Assembly: GCF_001194135.2 (NCBI RefSeq)
Contig: NC_068982.1
Location: forward strand, 92,499,818-92,563,817
Source of the DNA: Octopus bimaculoides
Taxonomy: Eukaryota
Direction: 5' to 3'
Length of the DNA stretch: 64,000 nucleotides
The notes under the pieces were generated by a model that was given only the letters and a program-made list of their open reading frames with translations, was not told the DNA's origin and did no database searches. The translations under genes and the position numbers were made by a program. Positions 4,435 to 54,200 of this stretch are shown piece by piece; the stretch's first letter is position 1; every line of letters starts with the position of its first letter.

Positions 4435-5582
4435 GGCGAAGTCATCCTGTGCGCACATCTACGGCCATTGGACAAAATCAAGTACCAGTGTCTCCTATTC
4501 CACGGAAAGGTTTATCTCCAAGCAAAACAAGCCCATTGTATGCACATATGTCAAATAAAGCAAGCAGTCAAGGAAAACAACCCAATACCTTGGAAGTTAA
4601 TAAAATTGCATCTAATGATGTTGAAGAAGGGATTGATGCTGTAGCATTCCAGAGTTTGAATCAACCTTGTGACAGTAAAAAAACACATCATGTAGGGCAA
4701 AACACTAATCCCATGAACATACAAGAGATTCCATTGGAGGACTTATCTCGTAAAGGCCGAAAGAGTAAATCTGATGGTGAGCGGCGGTCATTTTCATTTG
4801 GTGGTAGTCATCGGTCAGAACACAGTAGGAGTCACTCACACAGCCCTCGTAGAATACGAAGTGGTTCTAGTCCTGCTTCCTACTCTCCAGATCGTCGTAG
4901 CAGTCGTGTTCGGTCAGTATCATCAGATAAAAGTAAACATGACAGAAATAGTGACAGCCATTCAACAATCACACCTGGTTCCTGCTCTCAAAGTGGCTCG
5001 CAGTCTTCATCAGACAATAGTCCAGAATCTACTAAAACTTCTTTGAAAGATCTGGCTAAACTGTTACAATCCCCCAAAACTCTACGACCTGCAGAGGCTC
5101 CAACATTGTCTCTCTTAGTAGATGGAGAAAAAACTGATCCAGGGAGTCCAACCCTGCTACCTCCAATGGAGACACATATAGTGAAAGTGAAAGCAAGCAG
5201 TTTTAATGGTGCTACCAGTGCTGGCACTTCTTCAACATCTGCATCAGATGAAGACAATAGTGAAGAAGCTATACGTAGCCCAATTATTGTGCCAATGCGA
5301 GGAGTTAGCTCTCCTTCGGTACAGCTCACCCGTTTAGCCCAGATAGTACAACAGCACTATAAGTATGCTGATAACAACAACGAACATGCACAGCTGGTGT
5401 TTTCTCCAGTAGAACCACCTGCTGAAATTGGTCAGCCAGTTGAAGCAGATGATGTTTTGGACTCTCCGGTTAATGGTGTCCCATCAGCAGCACCTAGTGA
5501 TGTCACAAAACACTCATCTCCAGTTAACAGTGTCCCACCACCACCATCCACTGATATTGTGGAACAGTCCACTTTGGGATAA
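4435..5582 (+). CDS. Terminal coding exon of an unidentified plus-strand gene; Ser/Arg/Pro-rich, probably disordered C-terminus (about 381 codons)
   Basis: Pyrimidine tract plus AG acceptor (ttttttctaatttag, AG at 4433-4434); open frame (x)GG CGA AGT CAT CCT GTG... to TAA 5580-5582; GC and codon usage clearly unlike the flanks; no recognisable domain. Confidence 0.8.
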
Positions 5583-16800: not shown

Positions 16801-18041
16801 CAAAGTCGACTTCGACGGAATTCGAACACAGAACGTAGCGATGCCTGCTCGCCCGCCTTATGTGTATGCATAATGATAATGATTCAGTTATTTGTGAATG
16901 CGGAGGTTTAGATGCTTACTTTCGTAAACGTACGCATTATTTGGGTATAAATTTGTGGTTGTAAGGAAGTGCTGCGTTACGATAAAACGAATTTATAATA
17001 GCGGCACCGGTACATTTATAACATGTTATTTTTAGCTCCCCAATGTTAAATGAACAAATTCTGGTTAATTTATATACAGAATAAATCGGATGCAAAGGTA
17101 GTCTTCTAAAAAAAAGTGAGGGAAAAAGATATAAACCTTCATTTTTTTTATACTCTGCGATTTACTTTCTACTACTGGTTATTAAAGATTTGCGTTTAAT
17201 TTTCTTCATATTTTTAAAAACTAAGAAAGCGATTTTTGTTCCTAAATATAAATTTTTTTTACGTCCACATCTGTTAAGTCTGATATTTTTATAGACTAAA
17301 TTATCGGAGTTACATCGTGCTATTTAAAATAATGAATTGAAATTCAGAAAATATACTGAGGGAAAATATGAAAGGTAATGTTAAAGGAAACCACACGTGC
17401 ATATGTGCGTGTGGATATATATATATATATATGCATGAATGTATGTACAAAAATAAAAGAATGTTAGATTCATAATTGACTTTAATTAAACATTTGGTTG
17501 AGGAAATTTCAGAAAAGAAATGCTTAAGTATGTTTTAACAGATATTCAAGGATAAATCTGAAGGTAACGTTACAGTTAACAGGTAAATTGGAGCTGTATT
17601 TATGATGTACTTGTAGCGTATGTGTAAAGTACACTTGCAAATATAATTAGAAAGAAATCTATCGTAGCAAGATATGGTCTTGTTAAAAGAAAAACAATAA
17701 AAAACATTATCACTAATGTAAATAAACTAACTTAGCACTAGTACTATTTAAAGTAATTTTGTGCCGTTCTAACCCAAGGCCTCGGTAGCGCAGTAGGCAG
17801 CGCGTCAGTCTCATAATCATGCTTCAAATAAGAGGAATCTGAAGGTCGTGAGTTCGATCCTCACCCGGGGCAGATTTTTTAAAGTCCTTGACTAGCATAC
17901 TTAAATATATATGTTCCCAAATCTATTAATTTGTAGTGGGTAACTATTTTTTTAAATGTATTTCTACTAATTTGCTGTAGTATTCTGATTATGATGTTTG
18001 ATGGGCAAGACTTCAGCCCGTCCCCCACCAGAAAACCACCA

Positions 18042-18086
<45 letters not shown>

Positions 18087-21000
18087 CTGACACAAATCCC
18101 ACTTTTCGGTTACGTCCGCTTTCCATGCTAGCATGAGTTGGACGATTTGACTGAGGACTGGTGAAACCAGATGGCTACACCAGGCTCCAATCTGATTTGG
18201 CAGAGTTTCTACAGCTGGATACCCTTCCTAACACCAACCACTCCGAGAGTGTAGTGGGTGCTTTTATGTGCCACCGGCACGAAGGCCAGTCAGTGGGTAC
18301 TGGCAACGGCCACGCTCAAAATGGTGTATTTTATGTGCCACCTGCACAGGAGCCAGTCCAGCGGGACTGGCAACGAACTCGCTCGAATGTCTTTTCACGT
18401 GCCAGGAAGGTGACGTTGGTAATGGTTACGCTCAAATGGTGCTATTTATGTGCCACCGGCACAGAGATCTGCAAATCAAATTGGCACATCGAAACGTTCG
18501 TAAATGAATCATTATACAATCTCCACATAATTAAATCAATGGTTAACTAGCCCAATTGACTTGCTTTTTCTTGTGTTTGTTTCTCCATTCTCCACTTAAT
18601 TATATATGTTGTTGTTGGCACTCCGTCGCTTACGACGTCGAGGGTTCCAGTTGATCCGATCAACGGAACAGCCTGCTCTTGAAATTAACGTGCAAGTGGC
18701 TGAGCACTCCACAGACACGTGTACCCTTAACAGACACAGTGTGACAAGGCTGGCCCTTTGAATTACAGGCACAACAGAAACAGGAGGTAAGAGCGAGAGN
18801 NNNNNNNNNNNNNNNNNNNNNNNNNNNNNNNNNNNNNNNNNNNNNNNNNNNNNNNNNNNNNNNNNNNNNNNNNNNNNNNNNNNNNNNNNNNNNNNNNNNN
18901 NNNNNNNNNNNNNNNNNNNNNNNNNNNNNNNNNNNNNNNNNNNNNNNNNNNNNNNNNNNNNNNNNNNNNNNNNNNNNNNNNNNNNNNNNNNNNNNNNNNN
19001 NNNNNNNNNNNNNNNNNNNNNNNNNNNNNNNNNNNNNNNNNNNNNNNNNNNNNNNNNNNNNNNNNNNNNNNNNNNNNNNNNNNNNNNNNNNNNNNNNNNN
19101 NNNNNNNNNNNNNNNNNNNNNNNNNNNNNNNNNNNNNNNNNNNNNNNNNNNNNNNNNNNNNNNNNNNNNNNNNNNNNNNNCGATAGAATACGTACTAGGG
19201 TTACAAAGAATAAGTCATGGGGTCGATTTGTTTGACTAAAGGCGGTGCTCCAGCATGGCCACAGTCATATAACTGAAACAAGTAAAAAAGTAAAAGAGTA
19301 AGAGTAAATTTGGGAGAAAATGGGGTGGGGCGGAAGTCTTTCCTAGATATGTTTGCTTGAATCCAGGTGAAAAAGTCACTGCTAAAAGAATTAGGAAAAG
19401 TCACGGTAATAAAGTCACAGGGATTTTGTCCGGGGGTGTTTTGTCCAAGGGGGTTTTGTCCTAGTGGGGTTTTGTCCGTATTCCATAAATCAATTGTGAC
19501 TTTTTTTCCTGTGACTTTATTACCGGCCACCATAAATTAATTGTGACTTTTTTCCTGTGATGTATTTTCCTAGCTAAAATTGTGACTTTATTATCAGTCA
19601 CTGTTTGTTTAATGAACTTGATGAGAAGGTCAGTTGTAGACTTTATAAGGTCAGTTGTAGACTTTATAAGGTCAGTTGTAGACTTTATAAGGTCAGTTGT
19701 AGACTTTATAAGGTCAGTTGTAGACTTTATAAGGTCAGTTGTAGACTTTATAAGGCCTGTGATACGTTTGGAAAGCTTGAATCGAAGCTCTGGTTGGAAT
19801 TAGAAATCGAAGCAGCAATGCAAGAGATCTATCAATAGAGCTGTTAAAACACATCCAGGAGATTCAGCAGGCCTTTGGCAATGATATCATGGACAAAACT
19901 CAGAACAAGGAGTAGTACAACTGCTTTGAACTTGGTCACACCTCAGTGGAGAGTGAGGCATGCTCAGGCAAGCCAACCATTAGCAGAAACGAAGAGCCGA
20001 TTGAGACGGTTTGACAAATAGTCATAGATGACTATCTTATAACAATCTAGGAAAGTGGGAATAAGCACAGGATCAGTGCATTCCATTTTAACAGGATTTA
20101 TGCACGTGGTGAGAGTTGGCAAAAAAATGAAGTCGGATACTTTCTGAACGCATCTTGTAATCCAATTTCCTAGTCAAGAACAACACATGACTTGTTCCAC
20201 AGGTTCCCTACTCTCCTGACTTGGCACCGTTTGACTTCTAGTTCTTCCCCAAACTGAAAACAATGCTGAAAGGGGAGCGATTTAAGTTGTGAGAGGGAAC
20301 AATGAGAAAAGTGACGGCAGAGCTTCATAGCATTCCTGGGAAGGTGTTCCAGAGGTATTACCGGTAATGGCAGAACTGCTGGAAGAAGTGCGTGAACTCT
20401 CAAGGGGAGTATTTTGAAGGTGATTGAATAAAATTTGTGAAATGTACAACATTGTATTTTTTTTTATGCCCAAAGGTCAGATACTTTTTTAATGCACTTC
20501 ATATGTACGTAAAAACAAATGATAAAAATTACTTGGATACAGTGGAAGAGTACACTAATTTATTTCAGCTGACTCAGCTTACAGTTACTCTTGAGTTTTC
20601 CCTATGTTCAGTCAGTTAGTTGGTAGAATAAAATGGATGGAAAAAAATAGAAAACTTGCCATGATAGTAGGTAGATCTGACCATACTGTTAGTTGTGTAT
20701 GATGAATGGCTAGTGGAAGGAAGTAAGTGACTGGCTGGCCATTTGTTGGTATTTCAATGAAATACATACAAGCCTTTAATCATGACCCTAAAGGTTTCTG
20801 CGAATTGCATACATCCAAAGAAAAGACAAAACGAAACTGGGAACATGGAAGGTGTGAAAGAGGTTGAAAGGGATGCTAGATGGGTGGCAGTTGTGAGGTG
20901 GTAATGTTATTTCTACTTTCAGTGATTAGGAATTACTATTGTTAATTAGCATTGTGGTACATAAAACAAAAGTAGTGAATTGTGGAAGGTCTGTTTGTCT

Positions 21001-37500: not shown

Positions 37501-40500
37501 AGATTGAGGAACATAGCTTGAAATAATATACTAAGATAGTTGTTATACAGACCAATGCTTCTCAAACTATTTGATGTGGCATACCGGCAGTTTTTTTTTT
37601 CCAGTGTGCCAGAGACCAGTAATATTCCTTAGTAATATACTGGAAACAGTATATATAATGAATATAATAAAAGTTGATAAGTTTTTTAATCTTATATTTA
37701 TTTTTTAAATAAATAATACAATATTACATAAATATTTTATAAGCATTTTATAATGAGTCTTTCTTTTCTGGAAACTTGCTTCATACTGGTAGCTGATTGC
37801 TGGCACCAGTCTGCAGACCACCACTTTGAGTGGCACTGACATAGACCAATGTCTTCAATACTTGGAAAATTTCAGATGACAACTTTCTGACCTTTGTCAG
37901 AACCTAAAAAAAAGCATTATATAAAATAATGGAAGACTGTACATATTGGTATCTAAGTCAATGCATTTACCTTGCTTTATGATAAACTTACTTTCTCCCA
38001 GTTTTTTGTAGTTTGCTTCAAATAATACTGACAAATGTTGACAATTTTATTTCAAATTCACCTCTCAACCCTTACAACTGATACCTGCCAATCTCCTCAC
38101 TCCTCTCAGTATCTGAAACGTTTGTCTTGTACTCTTCTTTTAATAAAAAAAAGTTCCTTCAAACTTTTCTTCTGGGACCTTTCAGCCTCTCTGTCTCCTT
38201 AGATATTTATCCTGTCTCTGGCTACACTCAAGATTTTAAAGCCTAATGAAGTGTGAACTTCAAAACCACACTCAACTCACTACATAAGTGTTGTGTGGAC
38301 GCCCCCAGGCGATAAGTAGGCTAATCTAATACGTATAAATAGCTAGACGAAAAGCATCGCGTAGAGTGAGCCAGAGCCATCGGTAGACTAGACGTCAAGT
38401 TCTGTAGAGTCGAGTCGCTGGAAGTGAGAGTTGAGTAGAGGTTATCCGCATGTGCAATATAACAGTGGAGATGAGGATTTCGTAGCTCACACAGCCACTG
38501 TGTAGTATTGCGATATAACAGTGGCGACGAGGTTTCGGATAGTACCGAAATGGAAGAGTTACTGAAAGCAGTTGCAAAACAACAAGAGCAGCAGCAGCAG
38601 CAACTACAGAAGTTAACAGAATTGTTACTGCAGGTGTGAAATACGACAATCATTTTCAGCAGATGGTGTTGCAAATTCCATCGAAGAATTTCACTACAAT
38701 CTGGATGAAGGAACTACTTTTGCTGAATATTACAGACGATACGAAGACATATTCCGAGAGGAATGCAAGGGATGGTCTAGTGAAAGGAAGGTAAGGCTCC
38801 TTTTGCGAAAGCTTGCTACTCCGGAACACGTAAGTTTTTGTAACTTTATTTTGTTGAGAAAGCCCATGGAATTGTGTTTTGATGAAATGATAAATATTTT
38901 GACTAATATTTTTTGCGAGAAAAGTTCGCAGTTTAACATTCGATGGGAATGTTTAAATTTAAAGAAAAATGAGTCTGATGATTTTGTAACATAGGCTGGT
39001 ATGGTTAATAAGGCTTGCGAAAGGTTTAAGCTGGAAGAATTAACACCAGATATGTTCAAGTGCCTAATATTCGTTAAAGGGTTAGTGGCAACGGAAGACA
39101 TGGAAATTATAAAAAGAATATTATCAAAGTTAAATCAAGATGTGAAACTCACTTTGCAGAAAGTGGCTGAGGAATGCCAACAAATAATAAACCTTCGAGA
39201 CGATACAAGGAAGATAGAAGACAAGAATAATAATGTATAAATGTGTAAAAAAAGTACAGAAAGAAGGAAAAATTTTAATTCAAAATGGTGCTATGGTTGC
39301 GGAGATCGACATTTGAGGAAAGATTGCCCCTTTAAAGATAAAACCTGTTTTAAGTGTGGTAAAATTGGACATATACAAACGAAATGCTAGTCAAAGAAAA
39401 TAGTAAAACAGAAGAATGTCTACTCAACAAAAGTAAATTATACCAGACAAAACCAAAAATTTGTGTTGGTAGAAATAAATGGGTTTCAGACCAAAATGCA
39501 ATTAGATACTGGTTCAGACATATCGATAATAAATACAGCAACATGGAGTAAGACAGGCAGGCCGTTGTATAAAAAAACTACTAGGATAGCTCATGGTGTG
39601 TCAGGGAAACAAGTTCAATTCTTGGGCGAAATTTCACCAGAAATAAAAACTAAAAACAGGACGAGGAAATGTAAACTAATGGTATCTAAGAATACAATGA
39701 ATATGTTCAGGGCAGATTTAATGGAAGGATTCGACCTGTGGGATCTATCACTGAATACATTATGTAACAAGGTGAATGCATCACAGTCCGTGTCAGAGAA
39801 AGCATTGGAAAAACTGAAATTAAAATTGAAAAAGATGTACCCTGATATTTTTTTGAAAGAGCTTGGTATGTGTAAAAATATTAAAGTAAAGTTTGAGTTG
39901 AAAGAAAATGTGGTGCCAGTGTTCAAACCGAAAAGGAATGTACCTTTTACAGCTTTAAATCAAGTTGAGAAGGAATTAAAAAAATTGGAAAACATGGAAG
40001 TAATTGAAAAAGTAGACTACTCTGAGTGGGCGGCTCCTACGGTATATATATAAAAATGAAGAACAATGAGGTAAGAGTATGTCGGACTTCTCAACTGGTC
40101 TTAATGATTGTTTAAAAAATTACAATTATCTGCTTCCAAACCCAAAAGAAATATTTGCCAAGTGCAATGGTGGGAAAATTTTTTCCAAGCTGGATTTGTC
40201 AGAGGCCTACCTCCAATTACTGGTAGATGAAGAATGTGCTAAAGTATTAACAATCAATGCTCATAAAGGTCTCTATCATTTCAAAAGACTGCCATTTGGG
40301 GTAAAGGTCGCACCAGCAATATTTCAGCAATATTTCAGCAGATTGTGAGTTTGCAGTCCCATACTTGGATGAAATATTGATCAAAAGTGAATCAAGGGAC
40401 CAACATATTGAACATATAGAAGAGGTTTTCAAACGAATATGTGATTACGGGTTTAAAGTAAGGGAGGATAAATGTGAATTTTTCTTGACAAAAATAAAGT

Positions 40501-43500
40501 GCTTAGGACAAGTAATCGATGAAAACGGACGAAAACCGGACCCTTCTAGGATCAATGTGATAAAAAAAAAATGCCTGCTCCCACTAACAAAACAACACTA
40601 TAAGCATTTTTAGGTTTGGTAAGTTATTACCAGTTGTACATACCTAAAATGTATGAGCTAAGAGCTCCGTTGAATAAGTTGCTAAAGGAGGACTTGAAAT
40701 GGAGCTGGACAAACGAATGTCAGAAATCATTCGAGGAATTAAAAAGCGGTTAACATCAGAGTTATCATTAACTCATTTCGACCCAAATCGGAAAATAATT
40801 GTGGCATCGGATGCCAGTGAATATGGTATAGGAGCTGTGATATTGCATAAATTTAATGATGGTAAAATCAAAGCTATTGCACATGCATCGAGAATTCTGT
40901 TACCAGCAGAAAGAAACTACTGCCAGATTGAAAAAGAGGCGTTATCATTAATCTTCGCAGTAAAAAAATTCTACAAATTCTTACATGTGAAGAAGTTTAC
41001 ACTGCAAACAGATCACCAACTGTTATTGTCTATTTTTGGTTCGAAAAAGGGTATCCCCATGCACTCAGCAAACTGCTTACAGCACTGGGAGACTACTCTG
41101 TTGAACTACAATTTCCAGATGGAGTTTTTGCCATCAATGAAAATGGGACATGCAGACGGGTTGTCTAGGCTAATTCCAAAATATGAGGAACCTTTTGAAG
41201 ACACGGTGATTGCATCATTAAAACTAGAAATGGAACTGAAGAACATTTTGTGCAATGTAGTATGTGATTTGCCGGTAATGCTGGAAGAAATTAAATTGAA
41301 ATCGGGAAATGATAGGTTCATAAATAAGATTTTTAAAATGTTGAGTAACACGAAAAATATAAATGAGCAAGATGCAGGTTCAAAGCACTATTCAGTATGT
41401 GATGAGGTATTATTATATACACAAAGAGTGGTAATACCTGAAGCACTGCAAAACAGAGTATTAAAAGACTTTCATGTAGGACATCCAGGGATTGTCTGGA
41501 TGAAGAACCTTATGAGAAGTTACGTTTATTGGCTGAATATGGACAAGCAAATCGAGAGACTGGTAAAGCAGTGTAGGGGATGTGCTATGGCAGCAAAGGC
41601 TCCCTCAGTGCAGATACAGCTGTGGCCAAAAATGGATTTGGCATGGTCTAGACTACATGTGGATTTTGCAGGACCAATAAATGACTCTCATTATATCATT
41701 GTGGTGGATAGCTATTCCAAATGGCCTGAAGTGTGTAAATGTTCAAGGCCAACCACAAGTGTGACTATTGACTTCTTGGAAGAACTGTTCGCTCATTATG
41801 GAGTGCCAGATACGATTGTGTCAGATAATGGTACACAATTCGTGGCGAAGGAGTTTGAAAGATTCTGTAAGTCGGTTCAGATGAAGCATGTGTTAACTCT
41901 GCTATACCATCCAAGGTCAAATGGGTTAGCGGAAAGATTCGTTGACACATTCAAGAGAGCCTTAAGGAAGACCAGACGGGAAATCCTTGAAGATACAAAT
42001 ATGACAAAGTTTTTGCAGGTGTATAGAATAACACTGAATCCAAATGCAGAGTCGGGTAGGTCACCCGCAGATTTGATGTTTTCCAGAAAAATTCGTTCTA
42101 TTTTTGACAAATAGTTGCTGAGCAGGAAACAGAAAATAGAAAATTCGGAAAGAAAAACGAAATTTTTTAACACAGGTGACAAAGTGTATTTTAAAATATA
42201 TAGTAACGGAAAATAGGACTGGGAACAAGGAAGTATAACTGGACGTCTGGGTACATGGTAAAAAGACCAAAATATGAACACAGAAGGCATTTAAACCAAT
42301 TAAAAAAAAGATATACCAAAAACCAAGAGAGGCAAGAAGAACCAATAGATTTATGGTATGATTTGTTCGAGGTCCCAGAACCACAAGCAGAAGCAGAATT
42401 GACACGTAGGTCAAACAGGAAGAGAAAACCTACAAAAATGATGGAAATTAACGCTAAGAGGAAAAGATGTGCCAGTTTCTCACCAAGGAAATAAAATCGA
42501 TAAATTCGGGTTTAAAGACTTTCAAAAGGGGGAGGTGTTGTGTGGACGCCCCCAGGCGATAAGTAGGCTAGTCCAATATGTATAAACAGCTAGACGAAAA
42601 GTGTCGCATAGAGCGAGCCGGAGCCATCGGTAGACTTGATATCGAGTTCTGTAGAGTCAAGTCGTCAGAAGTGAGAGTTGAGTAGAGGTCATCTGCACAT
42701 GCGATATAACAATAAGAAAAAGAGCTACTCAGATTCCTCTATATTTATCACTAAAATCTCTTGTGTGAAAAAGTAAGCATTGAAGCATCTCTCTCTTTAT
42801 ATGTACTGATTGGTAATATGCAGTACTGTAGAAGACTCGACCACCTTTGGTGAAATGTACCATGACGCTAGAGTAGTGTTTGGAGGCTGAAATATTTTGC
42901 ACACTGCTAAGCACACAACATTCATTTTGCTGCTTAAACCCTTTGAATCCATTGATTCCCCTCTGTTCCTGTTGCTCACTCTCTACTCATTGCTCTATTT
43001 CGTTCTTGTGACTATCCCACTCTTTACTAAGCCTATGTATCAGAGACTGCTTTGGTCAGCCCTTACCAAACCAATGTATAAGAGACTATACTGGGCTATC
43101 CTCTACAATTCCTTCTCTCTAGTGCATCTACCTTATCATCCTTACTCACACTCTCCTCATCCTCTCCACCCTCTCCTAAGGTCACTTCTATTACCAGCTA
43201 TCACCTAACATTTATCTTATCTCATCACCAACCCTTACTTTTGTCCACCTCTGCTGTTGCCAGTCAGTCTCTAGTCTTTATCTTACTCTGTCACCTTCCC
43301 ATAATTTTGTCCACTTTTGCTGTACTAAATAATCCTGTCCCTTACATCATACTACTACTTTCTTTCTTCCACCTAGTCATCAAGGCCCTTCTGATGTCCT
43401 TGATCTCTTTTCTAATCCCCCTCTTTGGTCACCTGAGCAAATGTACATGCTCTAGGCTACTGTGTACTCTCAGCACTTGCAACTCTCATCCATTTTCAAC

Positions 43501-48208: not shown

Positions 48209-51200
48209 TTATAATTATAAAGCAAATAGCTTTTGATGATTACAATCTTTTTTAATTAACAAAAAAAATTTTAATTACTTATTGACTGCATAAACATCAA
48301 GGTTATTTTTGACTTTATTATTTTCACATGTGCTCAGGTGATGTTCCATAAGACTTCTGTTATCTAAAATATAAATAAATATGAAACCAAAAATTAGATA
48401 AAACTAACAAAAGCAAATTAAATAGAAAATATTTATAGAGTCGTGATTTCTTTGCATAGGTACATGGTGAAAGCTAGTTGAAGAAGAAGTTTATAAACTA
48501 ATGAATCAACTTTGATATATATATTGTTGTCTTTGGGGATTGTCATGTTGCCAGTTTAGCCAATGAAAACACACACACTATATATTTGGTATTCACATGC
48601 TTCAGCTTTATTCTATATTAATTGTATTTTGGCTAGAGTTCTTTCGTCACACTTCTGTGACCACATTAGTGGTCCTTTGCTTTCTTCTTCCTTTTTTGTG
48701 TCTCTCCTTACTAACGATCTGCCATTTTGTATTCCTGTTGTATGTGTCTTTATTTGCGCATGCATGTATCTCTGTGTGTGCCTATGTTTAGTAAGTGTGT
48801 GTGTGGGAATGTGTATGGTACCTGCATTATCAGTATCCCCTGTTTATACACATTTGTTTAATTTACTTTTATTTATTTTATTCATTTGTTTTAATCTACT
48901 ATGTCATTTCTTTCTTTTTTTTTCTATTAATTTAATTTAATTTATTTTATTTTGTTTATGTATATAATTATTCAATTCCATTTATTTATCTGTGCATTGT
49001 ATTAGTTTCATATTATTATCAGTTTATGGGGATCTTATTCTGTCATAGGTTGTGGTGTGTGGGGTGTGTGTACTAGTGTTCCATTCTAGTTTTTTATTTA
49101 GGCTAGGTTTATCTTCTATTATGTGTGTAGCTTCCATAATTTGTCTAAGCTTTGCATCTGTTCTATGTGTGGACAAGATTTTAACTTCTATGTTGTTGAG
49201 GGAGCCCCAGTGTTCCTGCTCAGCATGTTGGTATAAAACTGATGAGCTCTTCTCTTCTTTAAGTTCCCTCCAATGCTCATTTACCCACTCTTCTATGCTC
49301 TGTGCTGTCTCTCCTATGTACGTCATTGTCTTGTTTCTGCACCATCCCTCTGTACATCTTATAGTATAGACTACATTCCTAGCTTTACAGTTTATTTGTG
49401 GGCTAAATCTACATACAATACAGTTCCTACCAGTACAGGGGGTTCTACGAAGTGGGTAGGTTCTACGAAGTGGGTAGGTTCTACTGATTAGGGATTTGAT
49501 AGGGTTACCTGGCCTTTCTACAATCTTAGTTCTTAGCTTAAGTTTGTTTAGGGCCCTTCTAAAGTGGTATGCCAGTTCGCCTCTAAGGGTGGTGTTAATG
49601 AAACCCCCCACACACCACAACCTATGACAGAAAAAAAATTAATGTAATAAAGCTTTATTATTTTTTAGATTAGTTTTATTATTATATATATCTTTTATAT
49701 TGAATAAAATATTAGCTTCAAATTTTGGGCACAAGGCCAACAATTTCAAGGAAGTGGATAAGGCAAACACATCAATTCCAGTGCTCAAATGATACTTCAA
49801 TTTGAAAGGGATGAAAGGCAAAGTTGATCCTGGTGGGCTCAAGAGAGAGAAAAAGAGAATGAAAAGGAAAATGTAAGCTGAAACAACATACTGTTATTTA
49901 AATATTCATTGAGGTTCTCTTTTATTCGAATGTATTTTCTGTCCTTTGTTGACATTTTCAGTATTAAGAACAACCAGAGAGATTTCTTGGATGGAGTGTC
50001 CAGAATTAATCGCAGATATGTTAATAACCTAATGATGTTACTGATTAAAAAAAAGTAGAAGCAAAAATATAAAAGTAAGACAATAATATATATAGGAAAT
50101 ATAGACTTTTGGGTAAATAAATCCATCCTATCTTTGCTAGTATAGATAGACTGATTGAAACTGATGATGACCATAACAATAACAACAATGACAATGATGA
50201 TGACAACGACGATGACAACAATGACAACGATGGTAATGATAATGATAATGATGGTGGTGGTAATGATGGTGATGGTGACGATGATGATAATGACAACGAA
50301 TGCACTGCTGCCACCAACTCACCTGCCTCTGCTGCCTTTGCCAATAATGAGATGAAAATAACAATGGGAGTGGTGATGTTGATGCTTTTTTCCTATAAAG
50401 GTAAGTTGAATAAGTGAGGCAGTATCATCCGTCTTCTGACGAGTGATGTTGATGTGATTTAATGTTTATCAGAGAAACACTAGTAGGTAGAAAATTACAG
50501 CCGGCAGCAATTCTGGGAAAGAGGGATTAGAATAAGGTTTAAAGATGATGATGCTCTCAAGACAGCTTGAATTCCTACAGGATAATAAATAATGCTTTGG
50601 GGTATAAAATTTATTAGAGTTAGCAGTTAATATCAGAGCTATTTATACAATTACCTTATCAAATCCATTATAGAATTTACATGGTAAATTCTATAATGTG
50701 TGATTAAAAAGATCAATTTGAAACTATGTGGTCAATCCCACTATACAACACTGTACAACACTTTGGGTAGGTACTTTCTATTTCAGGTCCATGAAAGCTT
50801 TATGAGTAAAATTTAATGGATGGAAACTTCCTTTGATATTGCTGCACCTTTTATGTGTCCATAGCTTACACCAGGTACAGTGTATGGAGTTTCTACCCAT
50901 GCCTTTTCTACAAATTGAGCAGGGTCATCTACCTGAAGGGGTTTGTGATTTGACAGCCTTCCTACTTACTAAGACTTTGGTTTTTGCTTGGTTAACTCTA
51001 AGACCCTTCGATTCTAGACCTTGCTTCCACACACTAAATTTCATCTTTAGTCCTGACAGTGACTTGGCTATTGGAGCAAAGTCATCAGGATAGAGGAGCT
51101 CCCAGGAGCAGCCTATCTTGAATTCCTCTGTTATTGCTTGGAGGATTATAATGAATAAAAAGGGGCTGAGGACTGATCCTTGGTGAACCCCTACTTCTAC

Positions 51201-54200
51201 TCGGAATTCTTCACTATACTTGTTGCCAACCCTCACCTTACTGGCAGCATCCCTATACAGGGCTTGTACCGCTCTTACCAACCACTCGCCTATCCCCAGT
51301 TTCCGCATTGACCAAATAAGGGATCGGGGGACCCTGTCAAAGGCTTTCTCCAAGTCAACAAAAGCCAAGTACAGAGGTTTATCTTTGGCTAGATATTTCT
51401 CCTGCAGTTGCCTAATCAGAAATATAGCATCAGTGGTGCTTCTGCCTGACAGAAAACCAAACTGCATCTCACTTAGGCTAACTCTCTCCCTAATTAGTTG
51501 GGCTATGACCCTCTCTGTAGCTTTCATCACCTGATCCAATAATTTGATACCCCTGCAGTTATTTCTGTCTAAAGCATCACCTTTACCCTTGTAGCAGTTA
51601 ACTATGGTGCTGCTACACCAGTCATTGGGTATGACTCCTTCATGAACTAACTGATTTGCGATACAGGCGACAAGACCATAACCCCCCCCCCCCGATATTT
51701 TAAGCATTTCAGCAGTGATTCCTGATGAGCTGGGAGCTTCCCCTGTCTTATATCCTTAATATCCTTAATTCTTTATCTATCAGGGTACTGTTGATTTGGG
51801 TAGCTGGGCCCTCAGTTGGTTCAACCTTTGGCAGACTTGCCTCCTCCCATTCATTCTTCACATTCAGCTGTCTTTCATAATGGCATCTCCAAGCCTCTTC
51901 TTTGCAGAATCATTAAACGCAAGGGCACCATCATCCATGCGGACACATTTCTCTCCTATGACATCACGGTTTTCTCTCACATACTGTCTTGCAATCCAAA
52001 ATACTTCAGTTCTTTGGTCCTCATGTCGCTGAACATAGACAAACTTCTTCTTTTCTGCTACTCCCTTGGCTATATATACCTGTCTCCTAGCTTCCCTTTT
52101 AGCTATCTGATACATTCTCCTGCTACCCCTACTCTTCCAGGCCGTCCAAACCTGTTTCTTTGCTCTAATGGACCTGTCTACAGTATTGTTCCACCATCAT
52201 GTTACCCTAGGTCTGGAAGGGACTTTACACCAGCCACAGATTTGGTCTGAGGCACTCATCAAACTGACTCACAGGAATTCCCAGCTGCCTTCTATGTCTG
52301 AGGACTGTAGCTCCTCCTCCCTATCATTAAATTTCTCAGTAAGGAAATCCCTAAACCTCTGACCATGTCCTTCTTTATCAGATTGGTCTGCTTTTTGGCA
52401 TCCTTCTGGCCTCGAGTCTAAAGTCACTAATGACCAGTCTATGCTGGGGGTACATTCTTCACCAGTGAGGGTCTTTGTATTTAAGAGCAACCATGCATCC
52501 CTCTGTCTGGGGAGAATGAAATCAATCCGGCTAGCAGAGTCACCTGATTGATACGTTATCAGGTGGCTAGCTGGCTTCCTGAAGCTGGTGTTGCAGATCA
52601 ATAGGATATTTGTATCGCAGAACTCCAGGAGCCTAGTTTCCTCTTCATGGCATTATTACCAAGTTGTAATGAGAGAAGCTGCTAGATAAATGATAAACAA
52701 TAGAACAATGTTTAAAAGAAGCTTCTAAGTAAATTTATGAAGAAAAAAGAAGAGAAAGAAGATTGAAACCATGTAAACAATTCTCTAGTGACAAATATGC
52801 ATTACCTGGAATTAATGTACTGGAAAAAGTAAAGCAACAATAATTTTCGTTCCAGTGATGTTAATAAATATTCCATCTGAAAATGTAGATCATGGTTTGA
52901 TATAAATTCTCTGTTATAGACATCTTACATAATTTATCATATTCCCTCTAGTAATGATTTATTACATCTGTTACATAATACTGTTAGATAAGAGATATGA
53001 AATTCCTATTTTACTTGAAAATATTGATTTCTAACATTGACATATTGGCTCAAATTTGTGAGGATACTACAATCAGTTAAATTAGTCCCAGTATTTGAGA
53101 GGTGCCTATTTTATCATCACTACAAGATGGAAGACAAAGTTAACTTCAGTGGGATTTGAACTCAGAATGTAAAGCAACATAATTAACCCTTCAGCATTTA
53201 AACTGGCCATAGCCAGCCCTGTTTTATGTTCAGACTGGGCAGATTTGGTCTTTCACACCTACCTGACAATGTCATTCAAATCATAAACAATCAAATCATT
53301 GAAATTTCAGTGCTATGAGATAATGCATGGTTAATTTAAAACAATGTGAATAAAAAAGCATTATATTTGACAGAGTAATCTGAATGCTAAAGGTTAATTA
53401 CCACAATGGATTAAGGCAAAAAAATAAATAATAAATCTGTTTTCCTTGAAAGCTGTGAACAAGCACTAGCCATTGTTCCAAAATTTCTGTCTATATACTG
53501 AATATTTTGATTGTTTCAAGATCTCTGATGGTACTTTCTCAAGATAGTAATGTGTAACACAAATAAAAGGAAACATCAAGCTTTAATATTTTTAAAATCT
53601 GAGTTCAAATCTCACTGAAGTTCACATTGCTCTCCATTCTTCTACATCAGATAAAATAAGTATTATAAGTATGTGTCTAAAATGTCTGACAACAACAACA
53701 AAGGGGATAACTCCAATAAGATCAGTTGATTGAAATTTCTGGATAATATAGATAATGCAGAATGGAATGGATTTCATTTTTGAAACCAACTAGATGAATA
53801 CTATAGTAAATTACCTTTTCATGATATATTTACATTAAGTATGATACATAGATAGCTAGAGGCTTGAAGTTTGAAATTTGGGAGAGTCTGTTAGTTGATT
53901 ATATTGACTCCAATACATGACTAGTACTTTATTTTATAGACTTGTCCCCTCCCCCCAAAAGAGTGTGATTTAAACTCAGAACATAAAGAACTAGAGAGCT
54001 AGAACAATTACTTTAAGGCTTTTTGTCCAACACTTTATTGATACTGCAGTCACCATCCTTACAATATTTCTTATAATAATAACCTATAGATAATCTAAAA
54101 CATAAGATAAAGTAAACAAATTACAATACTAAAATAAGAATGCTCCAGTTTGGCCATAACTGCATGGCTTACAACATGTAGCTTATGTTGCTGATATTGC

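What the first reader, a model, noticed from the sequence alone, without database searches (positions are those of the whole stretch)
17779..17880. Intron-containing elongator tRNA-Met(CAT) in an animal genome
Seen: a perfect cloverleaf with a 21-nt insert after A37. The antepenultimate intron base G17834 can pair with C32 (the anticodon-intron pair), and further pairs extend it (U33-A, C34-G, U36-A, A37-U). An intact T6 terminator follows. Established: metazoan tRNA introns are normally described in Tyr(GTA), Ile(TAT), Leu(CAA) and Arg(TCT), whereas Met(CAT) introns are typical of plants and some fungi. Inference: this is a functional TSEN/RtcB-spliced Met gene, a possible lineage-specific intron gain or retention and a potential source of a circular intron RNA.
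Basis: partly seen in the sequence, partly recalled or inferred. Interest (0 to 1): 0.75.

Follow-up and report, generated by a model that had tools for sequence, protein, structure and literature searches.

The report
Intron-bearing elongator methionine tRNA gene
This is a well-formed, probably working gene for the ordinary (elongator) methionine tRNA, interrupted by a 21-base intron; the same kind of intron turns up in a coral, a dust mite and many other marine animals, so it is an old, shared feature and not a speciality of this genome.

Summary
Window 17779-17872 (+) is an elongator tRNA-Met(CAT) gene with a 21-nt intron (17816-17836) at the canonical 37/38 site. G17834 can pair with C32, and a T6 terminator sits at 17875-17880 (Rfam 54.4 bits; ARAGORN with introns allowed).

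The reading as a functional, endonuclease-spliced gene is supported by comparison, not by expression data. The idea of a lineage-specific gain is not supported. Sixteen genes on 15 of these contigs and one bacterial-bin contig have a mature sequence identical to the window's, with 13 other introns. Nearly all the introns share one signature that the window's intron also has: they start AUC and carry G-A-G at -5 to -3.

One such contig is Orbicella faveolata (coral) by an exactly matching protein. Another is Dermatophagoides (dust mite) by two proteins in clusters of at least 90% identity. Initiator tRNA-Met genes on the same contigs have no intron.

The gene is therefore an ordinary member of a widespread animal class. 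That class is under-described: recent papers call Met introns a plant and fungal trait, or suggest they were lost in animals. I could not name the window's species (probably a mollusc). Splicing and circular intron RNA remain untested.

The parts
17745..17752 (+). TATA-like element TATTTAAA, 27-34 nt upstream of the mature 5' end. Possible upstream Pol III promoter element (inferred).
   Evidence: Read from the sequence. A TATA-like motif at -40 to -16 occurs in only 30 of 113 related genes, so it is not a class feature.
17779..17815 (+). 5' exon, tRNA positions 1-37. Contains the A box TAGCGCAGTAGG (17786-17797) and the anticodon CAT (17812-17814).
   Evidence: Rfam RF00005; ARAGORN with introns allowed; identical to the 5' exon of the 16 other genes with the same mature sequence.
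17816..17836 (+). 21-nt intron at the canonical 37/38 site, ATCATGCTTCAAATAAGAGGA. G17834 (position -3) pairs with C32 (17810). GAG at 17832-17834 is complementary to C32-U33-C34.
   Evidence: The constrained fold puts the 3' splice site in a 3-nt bulge next to the C32-G pair. The intron matches the class consensus AUC...GAG-N-N.
17837..17872 (+). 3' exon, tRNA positions 38-73. Contains the B box AGTTCGATCCT (17851-17861) and the discriminator A17872. No CCA is encoded.
17875..17880 (+). Pol III terminator, TTTTTT.
   Evidence: A run of four or more T starts within 10 nt of the discriminator in 110 of 112 related genes.

Best explanation
A functional nuclear gene for elongator tRNA-Met(CAU) that carries a canonical intron inherited from an early animal ancestor, possibly an older one.

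Proposed mechanism:
1. RNA polymerase III transcribes the gene from its internal A and B boxes and stops at the T6 run.
2. RNase P and RNase Z trim the ends.
3. The mature domain folds normally. The anticodon loop (C32-U33-C34, and perhaps U36-A37) pairs with the 3' part of the intron (GAG, and perhaps UA). This places the 3' splice site in a 3-nt bulge next to the C32-G(-3) pair.
4. The tRNA splicing endonuclease (TSEN) cuts after A37 and after intron base 21.
5. An RtcB-type ligase joins the halves to give CUCAUAAUCUGA, and CCA is added.
6. The released 21-nt intron is degraded or circularised.

Shown here: the gene anatomy, the capacity for the pairing, and conservation of both across many animals. 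Inferred: every enzymatic step.
For: 1. Strong tRNA model match and a correct Met(cat)-plus-intron call.
2. Elongator, not initiator. It has T54 in the T loop and lacks both A1:U72 and the GGG/CCC anticodon stem seen in the ten intron-less initiator genes found on related contigs.
3. The 73-nt mature sequence is 100% identical to 16 other genes on 15 metagenome contigs and one bacterial-bin contig. These carry 13 other intron sequences. That pattern is expected for exons under strong selection and introns drifting.
4. Other exon types differ from the window's by compensatory pairs: C5-G68 to A5-U68 in 25 genes, and G7-C66 to U7-A66 in about 20.
5. Among 93 distinct genes, intron position -3 is G in 92, -4 is A or G in 92, and -5 is G in 68. 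Eighty-five start ATC. The window's intron matches at all six positions, and the signature holds within each of seven exon-type lineages.
6. The pair at 32/-3 is the one anticodon-intron pair reported as conserved and critical for excision (PMC10485636).
7. A terminator follows within 10 nt in 110 of 112 related genes and in the window.
8. Taxon anchors. Contig L065 encodes a protein identical to Orbicella faveolata XP_020622617.1. Contig L062 encodes two adjacent proteins that fall in clusters of at least 90% identity with Dermatophagoides pteronyssinus proteins.
9. No intron-less elongator Met gene occurs in the 122 loci held (120 pattern contigs and two others) or in the window.
Against: - No expression, splicing or aminoacylation data exist for this copy. 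A recently silenced copy would look the same.
- Only 64 kb of the genome was available, so I cannot say whether intron-less Met genes exist elsewhere in it.
- The related loci were selected for having an intron, so the lack of intron-less elongator genes among them is weak evidence.
- The anticodon-intron helix is short: 3 pairs, a mismatch, then 2 pairs. Predicted energies are small (-3.5 kcal/mol). The C32-G(-3) pair appears in the constrained minimum-energy fold of only 36 of 84 related introns.
- The unconstrained fold of the whole precursor does not show the helix.
- Many of the 93 genes are paralogues or come from related hosts, so the counts are not independent events.
Confidence: 0.8

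Rival explanations
1. A structurally intact but silent or unspliced copy: a young pseudogene, or a gene that is never expressed.
For: There are no expression data. It is the only tRNA in the 64 kb, in repeat-rich, gap-ridden sequence with retroelement fragments. Its intron has an A35/A mismatch at position -6, where 43 of 93 relatives have a pairing U.
Against: There is not one substitution relative to a mature sequence shared by 16 other genes. The A box, B box and T6 are intact. The intron keeps all six consensus positions. A or another non-pairing base at -6 is common among relatives (50 of 93).
Confidence: 0.13
2. A lineage-specific intron gain in molluscs or in this species, convergent with the plant and fungal Met introns.
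For: Model animals are described as having introns only in Tyr, Ile-UAU, Leu-CAA and Arg-UCU genes, and reviews treat Met introns as a plant and fungal feature (PMC12168002, PMC13578239). Outside their ends, the introns have no alignable sequence.
Against: The same insertion site and the same AUC...GAG-N-N signature occur in a cnidarian, an arachnid and at least five further exon-type lineages. Many independent gains with the same 5' AUC, which the pairing rule does not require, are far less likely than inheritance.
Confidence: 0.04
3. A tRNA-derived SINE head or a retroposed tRNA copy, not a gene.
For: Invertebrate genomes are rich in tRNA-derived repeats, and the window holds LINE and LTR-element fragments.
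Against: The full cloverleaf scores 54 bits. The terminator follows two bases after the discriminator, with no SINE body or A-rich tail. No CCA is encoded. No flanking direct repeats bracket it. A retroposed mature tRNA would lack the intron. No other copy exists in the window.
Confidence: 0.03

Closest known systems
Intron-containing elongator tRNA-Met genes of land plants, green and red algae and many fungi
   Same: Same isoacceptor, same 37/38 site, short intron, and the same need for GAG at -5 to -3 to pair with C32-U33-C34. The two fungal- or plant-type genes caught in the scan (L036, L038) also end GAGCC and GAGCA.
   Different: The exons here are animal-type. The animal introns share a 5' AUC start that the plant, fungal and algal examples lack. 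Animals join exons with RtcB, not a Trl1-type ligase (established knowledge; PMC12168002).
The intron-containing tRNA genes of model animals: Tyr-GUA, Ile-UAU, Leu-CAA and, in vertebrates, Arg-UCU
   Same: Canonical 37/38 intron, anticodon-intron helix with the conserved proximal pair, and presumably the same TSEN and RtcB machinery. Tyr-GTA (8 of 8) and Ile-TAT (5 of 5) genes on the same metagenome contigs also carry introns.
   Different: A different isoacceptor, one not listed for human, mouse, fly or nematode. No intron-dependent modification is known for it.
Human intron-less elongator tRNA-Met(CAU), whose C34 is 2'-O-methylated by box C/D RNPs (Vitali and Kiss 2019, cited in PMC13578239)
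   Same: Near-identical mature tRNA. From memory, the human sequence differs at the 7:66 pair and one D-loop base. The coral exon type U7-A66 is of that kind.
   Different: The human genes have no intron. Whether the intron in other animals substitutes for, or interacts with, C34 modification is unknown.
tRNA intronic circular RNAs (tricRNAs) of Drosophila and C. elegans (PMC4536317)
   Same: They would arise from the same cleavage products if RtcB also closes the intron.
   Different: The documented tricRNAs come from longer introns (about 40-250 nt). A 21-nt circle has not been shown, and libraries usually size-exclude such RNAs.

Membership tests
Eukaryotic nuclear elongator tRNA-Met(CAU) gene | Cloverleaf with the conserved tRNA nucleotides | tested here: met
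   Rfam RF00005 54.4 bits, full-length model match 1-71; ARAGORN cloverleaf.
Eukaryotic nuclear elongator tRNA-Met(CAU) gene | Anticodon CAT at positions 34-36 | tested here: met
   17812-17814.
Eukaryotic nuclear elongator tRNA-Met(CAU) gene | Elongator and not initiator features: T54, no A1:U72, no three G-C pairs closing the anticodon stem | tested here: met
   G1-C72, anticodon stem UCAGU/UCUGA and T loop TTCGATC. This contrasts with the ten initiator genes on related contigs: AGCAG..., GGGCCCATAACCC, GATCGAAAC.
Eukaryotic nuclear elongator tRNA-Met(CAU) gene | Pol III type 2 promoter (A and B boxes) and an oligo-T terminator | tested here: met
   By inspection: TAGCGCAGTAGG at 17786-17797, AGTTCGATCCT at 17851-17861 and T6 at 17875-17880. 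The consensus forms are from established knowledge.
Eukaryotic nuclear elongator tRNA-Met(CAU) gene | Transcribed, processed and charged with methionine | not testable with these tools
   No RNA data are available.
Canonical eukaryotic (TSEN-spliced) tRNA intron | Located between positions 37 and 38 | tested here: met
   The boundary is ambiguous by one A, with the same mature product.
Canonical eukaryotic (TSEN-spliced) tRNA intron | Anticodon-intron pair between position 32 and intron position -3 | tested here: met
   C17810-G17834. G at -3 in 92 of 93 related genes. Importance per PMC10485636.
Canonical eukaryotic (TSEN-spliced) tRNA intron | 3' splice site in a 3-nt bulge next to that pair, and 5' site in a loop | tested here: inconclusive
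   Present in the constrained fold of the window's arm (-3.5 kcal/mol). The energies are small, the unconstrained fold differs, and only 36 of 84 relatives show the pair in their minimum-energy fold.
Canonical eukaryotic (TSEN-spliced) tRNA intron | Removed by TSEN, exons joined by RtcB | not testable with these tools
   Needs RNA sequencing or an in vitro assay.
tricRNA (circular tRNA intron) | Reads across the intron's 3'-to-5' junction; resistance to RNase R | not testable with these tools
   No RNA data are available.
tRNA pseudogene or tRNA-derived SINE | Degenerate cloverleaf, no adjacent terminator, SINE body or A-tail, flanking target-site duplication, many copies | tested here: not met
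   Whole-genome copy number was not testable.

The most novel reading that the evidence does not exclude
The elongator tRNA-Met intron is an ancestral feature of animals, perhaps of eukaryotes. It has been kept in cnidarians, arachnids, this probable mollusc and many other marine invertebrates, and lost only in some lineages, including vertebrates, flies and nematodes. On this reading, its animal-specific AUC...GAG-N-N signature reflects a function that needs the intron. One candidate is control of modification of C34 or A37 on the precursor, a job that vertebrates may have handed to snoRNA-guided C34 methylation. The evidence here favours the descent part. The functional part is speculation.
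Probability: 0.3. Interest if true: 0.6.

Novelty: new member of a known kind. Interest (0 to 1): 0.3.

Why it matters
On its own this gene is ordinary: one more canonical tRNA intron.

The comparison it prompted has some value. Two recent papers describe Met introns as a plant and fungal trait, and one of them suggests they may have been lost in animals. Public sequence already holds many animal elongator Met genes with an intron at the same site, a shared end signature and exons under strong constraint. The initiator genes on the same contigs have none.

That makes tRNA-Met a fifth intron family in animals, and a natural test case. The same mature tRNA is made with an intron in corals and mites and without one in humans. 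Any intron-dependent modification or regulation could therefore be found by direct comparison.

Tried and rejected
- Naming the window's species failed. The 377-aa ORF at 4449-5582 has a best hit of 65% in two unlabelled Logan runs and only a weak hit to Pecten maximus. The LTR-element ORF has a best named relative at 60%, Argonauta hians. The LINE RT ORF gave only unlabelled or mislabelled hits. Seven window ORFs are not in the protein collection as exact sequences. 'Probably a mollusc' is as far as this goes.
- I looked for a syntenic Met gene in loci fetched through protein hits: Pecten maximus L126, Argonauta hians L124, and L121-L123. None holds any tRNA.
- No mollusc anchor was found among the metagenome contigs. 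Most contigs lack usable ORFs, and the clusters for the worm-like exon type carry no names.
- The one hit in bacterial genome bins (FXLX01000321.1, 'SUP05 cluster bacterium CRYPA') is clearly host DNA, but I could not identify the host.
- Paper searches for accession prefixes and for mollusc or invertebrate Met introns found nothing relevant. The supplement of PMC12168002 with per-kingdom numbers is not held.
- Single-linkage clustering of the introns to get independent lineages collapsed into one chain. I replaced it by grouping on exon type.
- ARAGORN's default Leu(taa) label was rejected as an artefact of running without introns.
- The sigma-70 promoter and intrinsic-terminator scan does not apply to a Pol III gene.

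Full report
**What is there**

Window 17779-17872 on the + strand is a tRNA gene. Rfam's tRNA model matches it end to end at 54.4 bits (gathering score 29, E = 6e-9). The match leaves a 23-nt insert in the anticodon loop. It is the only Rfam or tRNA hit in the 64 kb.

ARAGORN in its default mode labels the gene Leu(taa). That is an artefact of forbidding introns. With introns allowed it returns tRNA-Met(cat), 73 nt mature, with a 21-nt intron.

With the canonical 37/38 placement, the parts are:
- 5' exon at 17779-17815.
- Intron at 17816-17836 (ATCATGCTTCAAATAAGAGGA).
- 3' exon at 17837-17872.

Runs of A make the boundary ambiguous by one base, without changing the product.

The cloverleaf is close to perfect. 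The acceptor stem has seven pairs, including U4-G69. The D stem has four G-C pairs and the T stem has five pairs. The anticodon stem has four Watson-Crick pairs plus U31-U39. That U-U lies inside the search pattern used below, so every related gene recovered has it by construction.

Several features fit a Pol III gene:
- The sequence matches the A-box and B-box consensus at 17786-17797 and 17851-17861.
- No CCA is encoded.
- TTTTTT lies at 17875-17880, two bases after the discriminator.
- A TATA-like TATTTAAA lies at 17745-17752.

The gene is an elongator, not an initiator. It has G1-C72 and T54, and it lacks the GGG/CCC anticodon stem of the ten initiator genes found on related contigs.

**The intron**

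G17834, the antepenultimate intron base, can pair with C32 (17810). The helix can continue with U33-A17833 and C34-G17832. An A35/A17831 mismatch follows, then U36-A17830 and A37-U17829.

I folded the anticodon arm with its stem fixed. The minimum-energy structure contains C32-G17834, U33-A and C34-G, and it places the 3' splice site in a 3-nt bulge. The energy is small (-3.5 kcal/mol), and the unconstrained fold of the whole precursor does not show the helix. Thermodynamic prediction alone is therefore weak evidence.

The pair between position 32 and intron position -3 is reported as the one anticodon-intron pair conserved among eukaryotic pre-tRNAs and critical for excision (PMC10485636).

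**Surroundings**

The window is draft animal DNA at 35.5% G+C, with about 2 kb of N gaps. It holds microsatellites and retroelement fragments: LTR-element protease and RNase H-integrase ORFs at 39.4-42.1 kb, and a LINE reverse transcriptase at 50.9-51.7 kb.

Nothing near the tRNA looks coding. No flanking direct repeats or SINE-like body surround it. No second copy exists in the window, even at three mismatches.

I could not name the species. The evidence is a weak hit to Pecten maximus and a 60% hit of the LTR element to Argonauta hians. Both point loosely to a mollusc. The other attempts gave nothing.

**Related genes elsewhere**

I scanned the metagenome contig collection for GTCAGTCTCATA, then 7-37 unspecified bases, then ATCTGAAGGTCGTG. 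This is the window's anticodon-arm exon sequence split by an insert.

Of the 124 matches (the window's own gene included), 112 have animal-type exons. They collapse to 93 distinct genes with introns of 13-36 nt. Their properties:
- The acceptor stem is fully paired in 84 of 93.
- A run of four or more T starts within 10 nt of the discriminator in 110 of 112.
- Sixteen genes on 15 metagenome contigs and one bacterial-bin contig (L125) have a mature sequence identical to the window's over all 73 nt. They carry 13 other introns.
- The other main exon types differ by compensatory pairs: C5-G68 to A5-U68, and G7-C66 to U7-A66.

This is the pattern of exons under strong selection with introns free to drift.

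The drift has limits:
- Position -3 is G in 92 of 93.
- Position -4 is A or G in 92 of 93.
- Position -5 is G in 68 of 93.
- The first three bases are ATC in 85 of 93.

The signature holds inside each of seven exon-type lineages. The window's intron matches it at all six positions. A chance insertion would do so about once in 4,000 times.

GAG at -5 to -3 is explained by pairing with C32-U33-C34. The two fungal- or plant-type genes caught by the scan share it as well. The 5' AUC is not explained by that pairing and is particular to the animal-type genes.

**Which organisms**

- Contig L065 encodes a 231-aa protein identical to XP_020622617.1 of the coral Orbicella faveolata.
- Contig L062 encodes two neighbouring proteins. 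They fall in clusters of at least 90% identity with Dermatophagoides pteronyssinus mitochondrial carrier homolog 2-like and calcium-independent phospholipase A2. The NCBI accessions of those two proteins are consecutive.

A cnidarian and an arachnid therefore both have the intron.

One further copy has exons identical to the window's. It sits on a low-coverage contig filed in a 'SUP05 cluster bacterium' genome bin and is evidently host DNA. I could not identify the host.

On ten contigs an initiator tRNA-Met gene lies next to the intron-bearing elongator gene and has no intron. No intron-less elongator Met gene occurs in any of the 122 loci held. Those loci were selected for having the intron, so this is weak evidence.

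**Interpretation**

The best explanation is a functional elongator tRNA-Met gene with a canonical intron, spliced by TSEN and an RtcB-type ligase, and inherited rather than newly gained (confidence 0.8). The enzymatic steps are inferred from established knowledge of the pathway. Nothing here shows transcription or splicing.

The rivals are a silent but intact copy (0.13), a lineage-specific gain (0.04) and a SINE or retroposed copy (0.03).

**Comparison with the literature**

A 2025 survey of GtRNAdb states that tM(CAU) introns are conserved in plants and fungi. It lists Tyr, Ile-UAU, Leu-CAA and Arg-UCU for animals (PMC12168002). [quoted passage not shown]

My searches of the held library found no paper that describes Met introns in animals. 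The genes are in public data and very probably in GtRNAdb tables that I could not consult.

I therefore rate the window's gene as a new member of a known kind, with low-to-moderate interest. The wider pattern is worth a short note: an animal-wide, signature-bearing Met intron that model organisms lack.

**Limits**

- The counts include paralogues and related hosts.
- Only two contigs are tied to a named organism.
- The mollusc origin of the window is unproven.
- Circular intron RNA is only a possibility.

Noticed in passing
Loci L004, L012, L033, L050, L060, L077, L081, L086, L089, L099, L100, L109 (e.g. L050 9565-9690): GC-rich, alga-like contigs carry Met-CAT genes with a 15-17-nt insert at 37/38 and a second insert of about 11 nt inside the T loop (GGTTCGAG[TGTATCGGCCA]CCCCAC). 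The second insert is probably a non-canonical intron.
   Followed up: no
Loci L010, L016, L018, L019, L030, L057, L068, L075, L090, L106: Intron-less initiator tRNA-Met genes lie within about 1 kb of intron-bearing elongator Met genes. The intron is therefore specific to the elongator.
   Followed up: yes
All animal-type loci; window 17816-17818: The animal Met introns begin AUC, the same three bases as A38-U39-C40 of exon 2. The coral type begins AUCUGA, the first six bases of exon 2. This hints at an origin by local duplication, or at an alternative mature-like anticodon stem in the precursor.
   Followed up: partly
L125 (FXLX01000321.1) 811-853: A 1-kb, 0.55x-coverage contig filed under 'uncultured SUP05 cluster bacterium isolate CRYPA' carries a eukaryotic Met-CAT gene with a 17-nt intron. 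This is host DNA in a symbiont genome bin.
   Followed up: partly
Window 50925-51707 (-): A LINE reverse-transcriptase fragment. Its closest database proteins (74-76% identity) are labelled 'Herbaspirillum sp. MAG' and 'Escherichia coli, partial'. These look like animal DNA in bacterial records.
   Followed up: no
Window 39463-42114 (+): LTR-retrotransposon pol fragments in separate ORFs: aspartyl protease, then RNase H and integrase. The best named relative is 60% identical, in Argonauta hians.
   Followed up: partly
Window 4449-5582 (+): A 377-aa serine-rich ORF with a 65% identical homologue in two unlabelled sequencing runs. It weakly resembles Pecten maximus LOC117345210, which lies directly downstream of a CLEC16A gene, so it may be a C-terminal exon of a CLEC16A-like gene.
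   Followed up: partly
Window 19605-19793: A 21-bp minisatellite of 7 copies (AAGGTCAGTTGTAGACTTTAT). A 67-bp imperfect repeat lies at 18252-18464.
   Followed up: no
Window 3.4-3.9 kb, 13.2-13.5 kb, 24.7-25.0 kb, 32.0-32.8 kb: Assembly gaps (runs of N) flanked by TA, CA and similar microsatellites. The window is draft-quality scaffold.
   Followed up: no
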